This document shows, piece by piece, positions 3,705-22,743 of a stretch of DNA of 27,934 nucleotides. This DNA is from Prasinococcaceae sp. CCMP 1430 (taxonomy: Eukaryota; Plantae; Prasinodermophyta). Position numbers and translations under genes: made by a program. The notes under the pieces were generated by a model, which searched no databases, had not been told where the DNA came from, and saw only the letters and a list, made by a program, of their open reading frames with translations. The DNA is taken from assembly GCA_013416795.1 (NCBI GenBank), contig RQSC01000523.1:144084-172017 (forward strand), written 5' to 3'. How positions within the stretch are numbered: position 1 is the stretch's first letter; every line of letters starts with the position of its first letter.

Positions 3705-5465
3705 TCATTCGGGCACCATGCTCCTGAGCGCGTACTCGGCGTGCAGGACCGCCGAGCGGTGCGCGTTGAGCAGCGCGAAGCCGTCCTCGGCGGTAGGCTC
3801 GAGGACGGCGCTCTCGCCCCACTCGTTCCACGCGTCGATGACGATCAGGTGGCGCCACTCCTGCGCGGCGCGCTCCGTCGCCGTGGAGGGAAAGAAGCAG
3901 GACTCGCCGGCGTCGGCGATGGCGCGCATCAGCTGCCTGAAGACGAGCACCTCGAAGGCGGACGCATCGGTGTCGTTGCCCCACGAGCAATGCACCTGCG
4001 CCTTGCCGGCGCTGGAGACGTGCCGCGGGTAGTTGGACCACCCGGCGAAGGCCCCCCTGAAGAAGTCCCAGTGGCCGTCGCGGACGTGCTTGGGCAGCAG
4101 GAGCGCGTCGTTGGCGCGGCGGGCCATCGCGCGCATGTAGCACGCGCAGGTCGGCGCGTCCTGGTCCGAGGTGGCGCGCGTGCCCACGCCGCAGTCGCTC
4201 CTGGCGGCCTTGAGCACGGGCATCTGGTTGCGGAACGCCCCGGGCATGAACTGCAGCATCGCGTCGAAGGTGTCCTTGCCCTCGGGCGCCGCGCTCGCGA
4301 GGCGGTCAACGCCCTGCGAGCCGAGCCAGCCGCCGACGGTGCCGACGAAGTAGATCCCCCTCTCGAAGCCGGCCTGCCGCGCGCGCCGCTGCCAGAAGGC
4401 CACCATGTCGTGCACGAGGCTGGGGCTCGGGGCGCGCGCCTCGTCGGGCGTGAACATGAGGCAGGGGTCGTACGCGGGCCACGCGCGGCCCTGCGCCCGG
4501 CCGACGCTCTCGTAGTGCCCTCGCGCCGCCGTGACGTCCGCGCCGACGTCGGGGTACCAGCGCATGTACAGCTCGGCGTGCGCGCACCCGCCCGGGCATG
4601 CGGGCGGGCTGGCGGCGGAGGCGCAGTGCTCGAGGGGCTCCTCGAGCGGCGTGTCGCTCTGCATGTGCTTGAGGTTGTACACGGCGAACACGGGCCGCCC
4701 ATCGACCTTGACGTACTCGTTCTGGCGGAAGAATGGCAGCAAGAAGTCGAAGTGCGCCGCCCACTCGACCGGGCCGCCGTAGCCCTGCCTGATGAGCGTG
4801 GAGGACCCGTCGTCGCCGTCCCAGCGCTTGCTCCACGGTTCGTTCGCCCACGAGAAGAAGTACGACAGGCCCAGACCTGCCGGCTCGGCGCGCGCCTCGA
4901 CCCCTCCTGCGCCGCCGGCGCCGCCGCCCACGGCGCCCGGCCCTCCGAGCAGGGCGTCCTGCAGGGGCTTGGTGAGGGTGGTGCGCCCGCCCTGGAACCA
5001 GTAGTGGTAGAACACGAAGGCGCTCACGCCGTGGGCGCGCGCCTGGCGCGCCTGGCGCCTGAGCGTCTCGCCGCCGTCCGCGATGTCGTAGTACACCGGC
5101 GGGTGGCGCACGCGCTGCCGAGCGACGGGGTCGTACTCGATGCCTCGAACGTGGTCCCACTCCGTCCAATTGGCGTACCAGAAGTTGTTGTTGTCCGGCG
5201 ATTCGTGGAAGCCCGGGTAGTAGATGGCAGCAGAGCGCACGCCGCAGCGCGCGAGGGCTGCCCCTGGGCGGGCGCGCGGACCGAGCGCGTCCGGAGGCTC
5301 GTGTGGGAATGCAGCCGCGTCGGATCGCGGCGCGGGCGCCGCTACGGCGCGTGCCTCCACTGCCGCGGCGAGCCCGAACACTTGCAGCACCAGCGTTGCC
5401 GCCGCCGCTGCTGCGCCTGCCACCGCCGCCGGGCGCGTGCGCAGAAATGCGCGCGGCGCCGGCAT
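3705..5465 (-). CDS. WbsX-family / GH99-like glycan-processing enzyme with N-terminal hydrophobic anchor, intronless
   Basis: Family motifs AIYYPGFH..DNNNFW..NWTEW, YYD, QARQARAHGVSAFVFYHYWF, SWANEPWSKRWDG, YVKVDGRPVFAVY and IDAWNEWGESAVLEP. Confidence 0.85.
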   Translation of the reverse strand: MPAPRAFLRTRPAAVAGAAAAAATLVLQVFGLAAAVEARAVAAPAPRSDAAAFPHEPPDALGPRARPGAALARCGVRSAAIYYPGFHESPDNNNFWYANWTEWDHVRGIEYDPVARQRVRHPPVYYDIADGGETLRRQARQARAHGVSAFVFYHYWFQGGRTTLTKPLQDALLGGPGAVGGGAGGAGGVEARAEPAGLGLSYFFSWANEPWSKRWDGDDGSSTLIRQGYGGPVEWAAHFDFLLPFFRQNEYVKVDGRPVFAVYNLKHMQSDTPLEEPLEHCASAASPPACPGGCAHAELYMRWYPDVGADVTAARGHYESVGRAQGRAWPAYDPCLMFTPDEARAPSPSLVHDMVAFWQRRARQAGFERGIYFVGTVGGWLGSQGVDRLASAAPEGKDTFDAMLQFMPGAFRNQMPVLKAARSDCGVGTRATSDQDAPTCACYMRAMARRANDALLLPKHVRDGHWDFFRGAFAGWSNYPRHVSSAGKAQVHCSWGNDTDASAFEVLVFRQLMRAIADAGESCFFPSTATERAAQEWRHLIVIDAWNEWGESAVLEPTAEDGFALLNAHRSAVLHAEYALRSMVPE

Positions 5466-10033: not shown

Positions 10034-10078
10034 GGCCGCCGCGAGGGCGGGGGGGGGCAAGGGGGGGGGCACACGCAC

Positions 10079-10338
10079 ATGTTGAGATCCTTCGCGCAGT
10101 GCGACATCATCTCCGTCCCCTGCTTGCGCATGCGCGCCTCCTGCTCGAACGTGATGCCCTCCAGCCGCGAGCGCGTCATCAAGCGCAGCTGCTTCTTGGA
10201 GAAGTACCAGCCTAACGAGGTCTCGAGGCTCGGCACGTTGTGCCGGAAAGCGTCTTCCTTCGCCTTGCGAGCGAGCGCAGCCTGCTCGGGCGTGCGCGCT
10301 GTTAAAGGGTGTCCAGTCTGCACCGCCATCGCCGCCAT
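10079..10338 (-). CDS. Orphan coding exon of unknown product (MAAMAVQTGHP...HCAKDLN) ending in a splice donor
   Basis: High GC3, protein-like composition, and a GTGCGT donor at 10078. No matching downstream exon could be identified. Confidence 0.5.
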
Positions 10339-10433
10339 GAACGCCACCTGCGTCCGCGCCCACCCACCCACCGCCACCACCTCGCCCCGGCGCGAGGGCG
10401 TGCCTAGCACGGGGGCGAGGGTGTGCGCAGCGC

Positions 10434-10532
10434 AAAAAAAAAAGAACGCGGGGAGTTGGGGTTCGGGTAAACCGCAAACCCGTACCGCTAGACATCGTCA
10501 AAATCAAAGAAAATGTAAACCCTGATTTTAAC
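10434..10532 (-). pseudogene. Diverged, internally deleted tandem copy of the tRNA-Pro gene
   Basis: Minus strand reads GTT, an intron-1 homolog (aaaatcagggtttacattttctttgattttgacgat), D-arm piece GTCTAGCGGTA, a hairpin, CCCCAACTCCCC, the same gcgt trailer as the main gene, then a T-run. Confidence 0.7.
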
Positions 10533-10538
10533 AAAAAA
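10533..10538 (-). terminator. Pol III T6 terminator of the tRNA-Pro gene
   Basis: TTTTTT on the minus strand 5 nt after the discriminator base. Confidence 0.75.
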
Positions 10539-10543
10539 TACGC

Positions 10544-10705
10544 GGGGAGTTGGGGGAATCGAACCCCCGGCCTCTCGCATTTACGCGCGCATTCGCGCGG
10601 AGTGGCCCCGAAGCGTTGGTCAAGAATACATTCGAATCCTTTAGAATCATACCACTAGACATCGTCAAAATCAAGGTAAACGCAAACCCTGATTCGCAAA
10701 CTCCC
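10544..10705 (-). tRNA. trnP-CGG: tRNA-Pro(CGG) with three introns; exons 10705-10697, 10660-10643, 10615-10607, 10579-10544
   Basis: Joined exons give a 72-nt cloverleaf: GGGAGTTTG|GTCTAGTGGTATGATTCT|CGCTTCGGG|TGCGAGAGGCCGGGGGTTCGATTCCCCCAACTCCCC. Acceptor stem GGGAGTT/AACTCCC, anticodon stem CTCGC/GCGAG, T-stem G5/C5 with TTCGATT loop, plant-type Pro D-arm. Confidence 0.92.
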
Positions 10706-11547
10706 AGTGGAAACCCCAAGTGGTGTTCGGCGGCCAAAATATTGGGCATATATTTCGGACAGGCGCGCGCGCCGCCGGCACTTCCACCTTTTCTCAGTTG
10801 GCTCCCAAAACGAATCCGAAACGCAAACGCGGGCTCGCTGCCGCGGACAAAAAAAAAGAAAAGAGCGGAGAATTGATCCCGACGTGGCGACCGGCGCCGC
10901 GTGGGATCCGGGGATCCCCGCTGCCGTGGATGGGGGGGATGGCAGGGTGGAAACCGAAAGATTCAATGGCGCGAGGTATTATCACGCGCGGGGATCAAAT
11001 GCGGCCCAGCGTCGGTGCAGATCCGGAAGCACTTGCAGCAATGCCAGCCACGAATTCGACCGCGCATTCACTCAACCCACGAAAGAAAGTCAGGTGCGCG
11101 TACGTCACATCGCCCACTTCGCCGCGGTATCAGATTCAAATTGCTGTGGTTCGGACCTTCATCATGGTGGTCCTGCATGCAAGCAAGGTACGGCGAGCGC
11201 CCGCTCCACCCGCGCTCCCTCCCGACGCGCAGCGCATCCTGTACTAGTCTCATCGCTTGGTATCGCGGTGCGTCTGGAGGTCAGGTCTGGCATCTGCTGC
11301 AGCGATTAAAAAGATTGCTCAGCTCGCATACGGAGCCGGGCGGAGCGCGCCGATGCTCCCGCTGTGGCGGGATGGGGAGGCGAGGGGGGGGGCGCGAGCG
11401 ACGCGGCGCGCCACAGCGTGTCGCCGGCGCGCGGCGTGCCTCCCTCGCGCGCGCGTGCGGCGGACCCCCTCGCCGCACGCTCGAGAGGACGGGGATACAC
11501 ACTACTGCGCACTGAGGGCGCGCGTGCACAGGCGCGCGCGCGCGAAG

Positions 11548-21848: not shown

Positions 21849-22743
21849 NNNNNNNNNNNNNNNNNNNNNNNNNNNNNNNNNNNNNNNNNNNNNNNNNNNN
21901 NNNNNNNNNNNNNNNNNNNNNNNNNNNNNNNNNNNNNNNNNNNNNNNNNNNNNNNNNNNNNNNNNNNNNNNNNNNNNNNNNNNNNNNNNNNNNNNNNNNN
22001 NNNNNNNNNNNNNNNNNNNNNNNNNNNNNNNNNNNNNNNNNNNNNNNNNNNNNNNNNNNNNNNNNNNNNNNNNNNNNNNNNNNNNNNNNNNNNNNNNNNN
22101 NNNNNNNNNNNNNNNNNNNNNNNNNNNNNNNNNNNNNNNNNNNNNNNNNNNNNNNNNNNNNNNNNNNNNNNNNNNNNNNNNNNNNNNNNNNNNNNNNNNN
22201 NNNNNNNNNNNNNNNNNNNNNNNNNNNNNNNNNNNNNNNNNNNNNNNNNNNNNNNNNNNNNNNNNNNNNNNNNNNNNNNNNNNNNNNNNNNNNNNNNNNN
22301 NNNNNNNNNNNNNNNNNNNNNNNNNNNNNNNNNNNNNNNNNNNNNNNNNNNNNNNNNNNNNNNNNNNNNNNNNNNNNNNNNNNNNNNNNNNNNNNNNNNN
22401 NNNNNNNNNNNNNNNNNNNNNNNNNNNNNNNNNNNNNNNNNNNNNNNNNNNNNNNNNNNNNNNNNNNNNNNNNNNNNNNNNNNNNNNNNNNNNNNNNNNN
22501 NNNNNNNNNNNNNNNNNNNNNNNNNNNNNNNNNNNNNNNNNNNNNNNNNNNNNNNNNNNNNNNNNNNNNNNNNNNNNNNNNNNNNNNNNNNNNNNNNNNN
22601 NNNNNNNNNNNNNNNNNNNNNNNNNNNNNNNNNNNNNNNNNNNNNNNNNNNNNNNNNNNNNNNNNNNNNNNNNNNNNNNNNNNNNNNNNNNNNNNNNNNN
22701 NNNNNNNNNNNNNNNNNNNNNNNNNNNNNNNNNNNNNNNNNNN
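21849..22743. other. Assembly gap (895 N)
   Basis: Run of N. Confidence 1.

What the first reader, a model, noticed from the sequence alone, without database searches (positions are those of the whole stretch)
10544..10705. tRNA-Pro(CGG) gene split by three introns, two at non-canonical sites with BHB-like junctions
Seen: four exons of 9, 18, 9 and 36 nt reassemble into a well-formed 72-nt tRNA-Pro cloverleaf. Introns are at 9/10 (36 nt, 10696-10661), 28/29 (27 nt, 10642-10616) and canonical 37/38 (27 nt, 10606-10580, with U32 opposite the antepenultimate intron A). Introns 1 and 2 each fold into a hairpin (aatcaggg/ccttgatt; aaggat/attctt). In both, the cut sites fall after the 2nd base of 3-nt bulges flanking a 4-bp helix with one mismatch, i.e. 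relaxed bulge-helix-bulge, and both end in TTGAC plus 3 nt. Established: multi-intron BHB tRNAs occur in Thermoproteales archaea and the red alga Cyanidioschyzon merolae, and permuted tRNAs occur in Mamiellales prasinophytes. Inference: this alga uses archaeal-style, structure-guided tRNA splicing, probably in a fixed order because intron 2 interrupts the anticodon stem. The 9/10 site is very unusual, and standard tRNA scanners would likely miss the gene.
Basis: partly seen in the sequence, partly recalled or inferred. Interest (0 to 1): 0.88.

Follow-up and report, generated by a model that had tools for sequence, protein, structure and literature searches.

The report
Three-intron proline tRNA gene, Prasinoderma
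The green alga Prasinoderma coloniale has a real, single-copy proline tRNA gene cut into four pieces by three short inserts, one so near the start that the normally discarded leader probably has to help form its cutting signal; the splicing is predicted, not shown, and the assembly has placed the gene in the wrong spot.

Summary
Observation confirmed. Four exons (9, 18, 9, 36 nt) give a complete tRNA-Pro(CGG). They match an uninterrupted algal Pro(CGG) gene at 69/72 bases, two of the differences being one compensatory pair. Introns lie at 9/10, 28/29 and 37/38 and cannot be slid. One contig of a public DNA run holds nt 1-71 without differences at single-copy depth and shows no intronless copy. 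All three junctions have relaxed bulge-helix-bulge geometry (3 of 4 central pairs).

Added here: (1) the outer helix of the 9/10 intron needs five leader bases that pair perfectly with the D-loop, replacing the acceptor stem in the precursor; (2) a paralogue shares this intron; (3) window 10044-10765 is a mis-joined gap fill, absent here in eight wild contigs and in that DNA run, so the neighbourhood is unreliable.

Organism: Prasinoderma coloniale. Three-intron tRNA genes are known in Cyanidioschyzon, the Guillardia nucleomorph and Thermoproteales; I found none reported for green algae, nor a 9/10 site. The scan already noted many ectopic-intron tRNA genes elsewhere in this genome, some with four introns. 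New variant of a known kind.

The parts
10736..10755 (-). Two AT-rich TATA-like blocks, at -50 to -43 and -38 to -31; candidate upstream Pol III promoter element (inferred)
   Evidence: inside the same X8 contig as the gene
10706..10710 (-). 5-nt leader CCACT, Watson-Crick complementary to D-loop nt 14-19; extends the outer helix of the intron-1 motif to 8 bp
   Evidence: the paralogue's match ends exactly at 10710
10697..10705 (-). Exon 1, tRNA nt 1-9
   Evidence: identical to uninterrupted homologues L002 and L003
10661..10696 (-). Intron 1, position 9/10, 36 nt; splits the A box; relaxed hBHBh' with 9-bp inner hairpin, 3/4 central helix and 8-bp outer helix using the leader
   Evidence: shared with a paralogue
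10643..10660 (-). Exon 2, tRNA nt 10-28 (no position 17)
   Evidence: 17/18 identical to L003
10616..10642 (-). Intron 2, position 28/29, 27 nt; HBh'-type (6-bp inner hairpin, 3/4 central helix, outer helix only 1 bp)
10607..10615 (-). Exon 3, tRNA nt 29-37 with anticodon CGG
   Evidence: identical to L003
10580..10606 (-). Intron 3, canonical 37/38, 27 nt; hBH-type with U32-A pair
10544..10579 (-). Exon 4, tRNA nt 38-73, intact B box (10565-10555), no encoded CCA
   Evidence: 34/36 identical to L003
10533..10538 (-). T6 run, Pol III terminator. It lies on a different X8 contig, joined through a 30-mer shared with the paralogue, so it may belong to either gene
10434..10529 (-). Relic partial copy: intron 1 plus nt 10-21 (89% identical), a second intron-1-like hairpin, acceptor 3' strand and T-run; not a tRNA
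   Evidence: present in X8 contig 13
10044..10765 (.). 722-bp segment foreign to this place: tRNA gene, relic and first exon of a cyclin gene, replacing a 76-84-bp GC-rich stretch upstream of the vacuolar sorting receptor gene

Best explanation
A functional nuclear tRNA-Pro(CGG) gene of Prasinoderma coloniale with three endonuclease-type introns. SHOWN: sequence, exon boundaries, single-copy depth in a DNA run, base-pairing potential of the three junctions, and a paralogue with the same 9/10 intron. INFERRED: Pol III transcribes it from the upstream AT-rich element plus the intact B box, since the A box is split. The precursor first folds as a long 5' hairpin in which five leader bases and G1-G3 pair with nt 11-19, which frames the 9/10 intron as a relaxed bulge-helix-bulge and leaves intron 2 free to form its hairpin. 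A tRNA splicing endonuclease of relaxed, structure-guided specificity (as proposed for Cyanidioschyzon merolae) cuts introns 1 and 2 on the leader-bearing precursor. The acceptor stem then forms, RNase P and RNase Z trim the ends, the canonical 37/38 intron is removed last, and CCA is added. Confidence is about 0.85 for 'functional and spliced' and about 0.5 for the leader-dependent step.
For: Exons 69/72 identical to an uninterrupted Pro(CGG) gene with a compensatory pair; all conserved tRNA positions intact. X8 contig with 0 differences at single-copy depth. The depth in every bin is fully explained by the listed contigs, so no intronless copy with this exon 4 was laid. CCG is 43 of 104 proline codons in five neighbouring genes. 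All three junctions show the BHB register. The real leader ranks 3rd of 1024 possible 5-mers in stabilising the intron-1 domain; the leader helix has probability 0.88-0.99 while intron 1 is present, and the acceptor stem takes over (0.6-0.94) once intron 1 is removed and intron 3 remains. The three uninterrupted-at-9/10 homologues lack this leader; the paralogue's match stops exactly at leader -5. Precedent for ordered BHB splicing with 37/38 last in C. merolae (PMC3728597).
Against: No RNA evidence: three RNA-like runs do not cover the gene (they appear to be mRNA assemblies, so this is uninformative). No orthologue from wild relatives was recovered, so conservation of exons against introns is untested for this gene. 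The central helices are not the minimum-energy register: -18.6 versus -23.4 kcal/mol for intron 1, +0.3 versus -2.9 for intron 2, and P of the intron-2 central pair is 0.02 or less, so the enzyme must select a minor fold. The transcription start is unknown, so the leader may be shorter than 5 nt. In the fully spliced RNA with leader, the 2D model still gives the leader helix 0.55-0.62. The endonuclease subunits were not examined.
Confidence: 0.8

Rival explanations
1. The gene is functional and spliced, but intron 1 is cut without the leader: the enzyme needs only the intron hairpin, one bulge and part of the central helix (HBh' or 'no H' motif, as in C. merolae and cryptophyte nucleomorphs), and the leader complementarity is chance or a leftover.
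For: Intron 2 has almost no outer helix yet must be cut too. 'No H' motifs are spliced in C. merolae. The intron-1 hairpin is stable on its own.
Against: Five consecutive Watson-Crick pairs in exact BHB register (5-mer frequency 0.0008; rank 3 of 1024). The paralogue's match ends at leader -5. The central helix uses nt 4-7, which are locked in the acceptor stem unless something displaces it.
Confidence: 0.35
2. A tRNA pseudogene inactivated by three insertions; CCG is read by another gene (an unseen Pro(CGG), or Pro(UGG) by wobble).
For: No expression data. A box disrupted. A decayed partial copy lies next to it in the assembly. Insertions in eukaryotic tRNA arms are usually taken as pseudogenes (PMC4090602).
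Against: No damaging exon change, and the stem differences from the homologue are compensatory. One insert is at exactly 37/38 with the U32-A pair. All three junctions are in BHB register. No intronless copy in the DNA run. Intron 1 is shared with a paralogue.
Confidence: 0.08
3. The gene is an assembly chimera or comes from a contaminant, since it sits inside a mis-joined segment.
For: Window 10044-10765 is absent at this place in eight wild contigs and in X8.
Against: nt 1-71 and 74 upstream bases lie in one contig of a separately assembled DNA run, with 0 differences and host single-copy depth. The breakpoints of the chimera fall outside the introns. Eukaryote-type sequence without CCA.
Confidence: 0.04

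Closest known systems
Cyanidioschyzon merolae multi-intron tRNA genes (Soma et al. [quoted passage not shown]
   Same: Nuclear, up to three short introns, ectopic plus 37/38, relaxed BHB types, split internal promoter with upstream TATA-like element and T-run.
   Different: Red alga, splicing shown by RT-PCR. Its listed sites are D-stem, D-loop, variable arm, T-stem, T-loop and 37/38; none in the anticodon stem. The exact D-stem positions are in a figure I could not read, so 9/10 cannot be fully excluded there.
Thermoproteales multi-intron tRNA genes, e.g. Pyrobaculum islandicum tRNA-Pro(UGG) with introns at 25/26, 37/38, 56/57, and the 3/4 introns (PMC4090602)
   Same: Three introns in a proline tRNA, relaxed HBh'/hBH motifs. 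A 3/4 intron must by geometry also use leader bases (my inference).
   Different: Archaeal, (alpha-beta)2 endonuclease, different positions. No homology claimed: this tRNA is of the eukaryotic algal type, and no prokaryotic genome matched.
Guillardia theta nucleomorph and Chondrus crispus ectopic tRNA introns (PMC4090602; bioRxiv 10.1101/2021.12.21.473619)
   Same: [quoted passage not shown]
   Different: Red lineage. C. crispus sites are fixed at 20/21 and 58/59; most G. theta introns cannot form a BHB (PMC3728597).
[quoted passage not shown] 2010, via PMC3978253)
   Same: Green-lineage BHB-dependent disrupted tRNA genes; one O. lucimarinus gene has an intron at 27/28.
   Different: This gene is collinear, not permuted. 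Those algae are described as having almost no atypical introns.

Membership tests
Eukaryotic nuclear tRNA-Pro(CGG) gene | Cloverleaf with conserved residues and anticodon CGG after intron removal | tested here: met
Eukaryotic nuclear tRNA-Pro(CGG) gene | Homology to uninterrupted tRNA-Pro genes, no encoded CCA, B box, T-run terminator | tested here: met
   69/72 to L003; B box intact; T6 present though its attachment is ambiguous
Eukaryotic nuclear tRNA-Pro(CGG) gene | Contiguous internal A box (nt 8-19) | tested here: not met
   split by the 36-nt intron at 9/10; also true of expressed C. merolae genes
Eukaryotic nuclear tRNA-Pro(CGG) gene | Expressed as mature, CCA-bearing tRNA | not testable with these tools
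   only contigs of mRNA-like runs were available, none covers the gene
BHB-type multi-intron tRNA genes (C. merolae / Thermoproteales kind) | Two or more short introns, at least one outside 37/38 | tested here: met
BHB-type multi-intron tRNA genes (C. merolae / Thermoproteales kind) | Strict hBHBh' motif (perfect 4-bp helix, two 3-nt bulges) | tested here: not met
   each central helix has one mismatch
BHB-type multi-intron tRNA genes (C. merolae / Thermoproteales kind) | Relaxed motif (hBHBh', HBh' or hBH) with cuts after the second bulge base | tested here: met
   intron 1 relaxed hBHBh' with leader, intron 2 HBh', intron 3 hBH; shuffle P 0.02, 0.0007, 0.08
BHB-type multi-intron tRNA genes (C. 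merolae / Thermoproteales kind) | Excision by the tRNA splicing endonuclease, ordered intermediates | not testable with these tools
   needs RT-PCR or an in vitro assay
BHB-type multi-intron tRNA genes (C. merolae / Thermoproteales kind) | Endonuclease of broadened specificity or altered subunit set | not tested
   SEN genes are not in the window; no note in the scan
Permuted or split tRNA genes | 3' half upstream of 5' half, or halves at separate loci | tested here: not met
   exons are collinear in one contig

The most novel reading that the evidence does not exclude
The deepest-branching green plant lineage runs a structure-guided tRNA splicing pathway in which the 5' leader is an obligatory part of the splice signal: leader-D-loop pairing builds the motif for a 9/10 intron and holds the acceptor stem open, so splicing must precede RNase P cleavage and acts as a conformational switch. 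The same intron and leader are kept in two proline isoacceptors, and related intron sequences appear to have been copied between sites.
Probability: 0.4. Interest if true: 0.75.

Novelty: new variant of a known kind. Interest (0 to 1): 0.58.

Why it matters
Reviews up to 2026 describe ectopic, multiple tRNA introns as a feature of red algae, cryptophyte nucleomorphs and archaea, and say green algae have almost none (PMC3978253, PMC13578239). A three-intron gene in Prasinodermophyta, which split before Chlorophyta and Streptophyta (PMC7455551), bears on whether relaxed tRNA splicing is ancestral in Archaeplastida or arose repeatedly, and gives a culturable green alga in which to test how a eukaryotic endonuclease handles substrates without a folded tRNA body. 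The 9/10 intron gives a sharp test of processing order (splicing before leader removal) and of Pol III transcription without an A box. Practically, such genes are invisible to standard annotation, and this assembly contains gap-fill chimeras that can mislead neighbourhood arguments.

Tried and rejected
Default ARAGORN and Rfam gathering scans: nothing; Rfam by E-value gave only a T-arm match to the tmRNA model, rejected as no tmRNA body is present. Metagenome scan with part of exon 4: five loci, none from Prasinoderma, none with ectopic introns. Three viral scans: nothing. Two prokaryotic genome scans: nothing, then two chance 19-mers without tRNA context. Wild orthologue through neighbouring genes: failed, because the true neighbours of the sorting-receptor gene and of the cyclin exon do not include the tRNA. 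Idea that intron 2 arose as an inverted copy of nt 7-27: not significant (P 0.10), rejected. Idea that the relic is a second tRNA or a permuted gene: no anticodon arm or T-loop, rejected. The sigma-70 promoter scan is irrelevant to a eukaryote. Literature searches for a 9/10 intron or for Prasinoderma nuclear tRNA introns found nothing, but key papers (Sugahara 2008, Marck and Grosjean 2003, Maruyama 2010) and figures were not readable.

Full report
Observation. Checked by position, the exons give all acceptor, anticodon-stem and T-stem pairs, three of four D-stem pairs, anticodon CGG and every conserved tRNA residue. ARAGORN and Rfam at default settings miss the gene. Inside a script, ARAGORN calls the exon model tRNA-Pro(cgg), and on the raw DNA with relaxed settings it finds the same outer ends but miscalls the gene.

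Independent definition of the exons. A metagenome scan with part of exon 4 returned eukaryote-type tRNA-Pro genes without ectopic introns. L003, an uninterrupted Pro(CGG), differs from the four exons at three bases only: a compensatory T28-A42 versus C28-G42 pair and position 47. The two 9-nt exons match it exactly and in order, which chance would not give, and none of the three introns can be slid. The positions are therefore 9/10, 28/29 and 37/38.

Organism. The window is a GC-rich eukaryote with spliceosomal genes. The cluster of the neighbouring vacuolar sorting receptor includes the EukProt Prasinoderma coloniale protein PRCOL_00004099, and the GC content fits the published 69.8% (PMC7455551).

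The DNA is real but mis-placed. In DNA run X8 one contig covers 10546-10779 with no difference at depth 58.8, like flanking single-copy DNA. However, eight wild contigs at 97-99% identity join window 10766 to 10043 through 76-84 GC-rich bases and lack 10044-10765. The loose ends of the X8 contigs at those two points are the same GC-rich bases. The inserted segment is itself three pieces whose X8 contigs each run on into other sequence, and one piece is the first exon of a cyclin gene whose remainder is not in the window. The simplest reading is a gap-fill chimera; a strain-specific insertion is less likely. The gene body and 74 upstream bases lie in one piece, so the finding stands, but the terminator and the relic are joined through a 30-mer shared with a paralogue and could belong to either gene. 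X8 was not flagged as a possible source of this DNA, but it may be the same strain.

Paralogue and copy number. X8 contig 15 matches 10650-10710 (6 differences in 61) and 10546-10575, with a different middle. It thus shares exon 1, the 9/10 intron, nt 10-21 and the end of exon 4. If the 30-nt piece lies at the contig end, the gene is 179 nt long, the length of the four-intron Pro(AGG) gene noted earlier by the scan (s1-409011). The observed depth in all six bins over the region equals the sum of the listed contigs to the decimal, so no further contig, such as an intronless copy with this exon 4, was laid. The tool filters some records and a gene with a divergent exon 4 would be missed. CCG makes up 43 of 104 proline codons in five nearby genes.

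Splice motifs. In BHB geometry the 5' exon ends with a 4-nt helix strand plus two bulge bases and the intron ends likewise. All three introns pair 3 of 4 in that register. Intron 2 has a 6-bp inner helix starting exactly at the expected base (P 0.0007 by shuffling) but only one outer pair (HBh'). Intron 3 is the usual eukaryotic hBH form with the U32-A pair and three outer pairs. Intron 1 has a 9-bp inner helix with one extra base (strict-register P 0.02). These registers are not the minimum-energy folds, so the motifs are relaxed and would need enzyme selection, as with crenarchaeal enzymes (PMC5829648).

The leader. For a 9/10 intron the central helix uses nt 4-7 and the outer helix nt 1-3, all of which belong to the acceptor stem. 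G1-G3 pair with nt 11-13, and the five bases before the gene continue this helix with five Watson-Crick pairs to nt 14-19, giving 8 bp. The real leader ranks third of 1024 5-mers for stabilising this domain. With intron 1 present the leader helix has probability 0.88-0.99; after its removal, with intron 3 still present, the acceptor stem forms instead (0.6-0.94); in the fully spliced RNA with leader the two are about even in a model without tertiary contacts. Homologues without the intron lack this leader, and the paralogue's match ends at exactly base -5, though I could not see where its six differences lie. This suggests intron 1 is cut on a leader-bearing precursor before RNase P acts. It is inference from folding; the start site is unknown.

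Order and transcription. Three anticodon-stem pairs can form with intron 2 in place, so intron 2 does not by itself block intron 3. But acceptor stem and D-arm are absent until introns 1 and 2 are gone, which fits the C. merolae result that 37/38 is removed last (PMC3728597). The order of introns 1 and 2 is open: the intron-2 hairpin forms only while intron 1 is present in the model (0.74 versus 0.01), while the energy rule favours intron 1 first. The A box is split, the B box is intact and AT-rich blocks lie at -50 to -31, as described for C. merolae genes.

Comparison. It works like the multi-intron genes of C. merolae, the G. theta nucleomorph and Thermoproteales; a three-intron tRNA-Pro is known from Pyrobaculum islandicum, and a 3/4 intron from Thermoproteales (PMC4090602). 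It meets the architectural criteria with relaxed motifs; enzymatic excision is untested. Reviews state that green algae have almost no atypical introns (PMC3978253; PMC13578239), PlantRNA 2.0 does not mention prasinophytes by name, and I found no report on Prasinoderma nuclear tRNA introns or on a 9/10 site, within a library that lacks several primary papers. Earlier notes of this scan list many ectopic-intron tRNA genes in this genome; I treated them as leads and checked only the paralogue, partly.

Method note. Searches of collections used single exon parts, contiguous genomic text, or exon parts with N gaps for introns. The joined spliced sequence was built only inside scripts from the window file for pairing, folding and an ARAGORN check; it was not searched against reads or collections, and that step is left out.

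Verdict. A real and very probably functional three-intron tRNA-Pro(CGG) gene; a new variant of a known kind, notable for its lineage, the 9/10 site and the probable role of the leader. Splicing is predicted, not shown. Interest 0.58.

Noticed in passing
window 10044-10765: Gap-fill chimera of three unrelated pieces replacing a 76-84-bp GC-rich stretch; any finding that relies on gene order here is unsafe. The sorting-receptor gene's true upstream region continues at 10766.
   Followed up: yes
window 10079-10338 (-): First exon of a cyclin gene (Cyclin_N homologue P0033); the remaining exons are not in the window, RNA contigs splice at 10078 to them.
   Followed up: yes
window 10434-10529 (-): Relic with two intron-1-like hairpins; it breaks after nt 21, the same point where the paralogue's match ends, so it may derive from a gene with a further intron at 21/22 that is related to intron 1 (15 of 16 aligned columns). 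Possible trace of intron copying.
   Followed up: partly
window 10696-10580, three introns: All three introns contain CGAAT (P about 0.005 by shuffling, noticed after the fact), and introns 1 and 2 share a 5-base run before their last 3 nt; may reflect common origin.
   Followed up: partly
window 10605-10601 and 10724-10720 (-): The leader 5-mer CCACT recurs at the start of intron 3 and about 15 nt further upstream; intron 3 can pair with the D-loop in the model of the late intermediate. Unexplained.
   Followed up: partly
L004 1101-1180 (-), same in L005: A permuted tRNA-Pro(AGG) (junction 37/38, 8-nt spacer) directly follows a Pro(CGG) gene with a canonical intron, a possible dicistronic pair in another GC-rich eukaryote; ARAGORN calls the re-ordered halves Pro(agg).
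   Followed up: partly
window 21849-22743 and 25213: N runs (895 nt and 1 nt): the assembly is scaffolded.
   Followed up: no
window 3708-5465 (-): Glycosyltransferase of the WbsX family, conserved next to the DnaJ-X gene in wild contigs.
   Followed up: no
window 10766-11335: Intergenic region is only 85-93% identical to wild contigs, against 97-99% in flanking genes; at least two wild haplotype groups.
   Followed up: no
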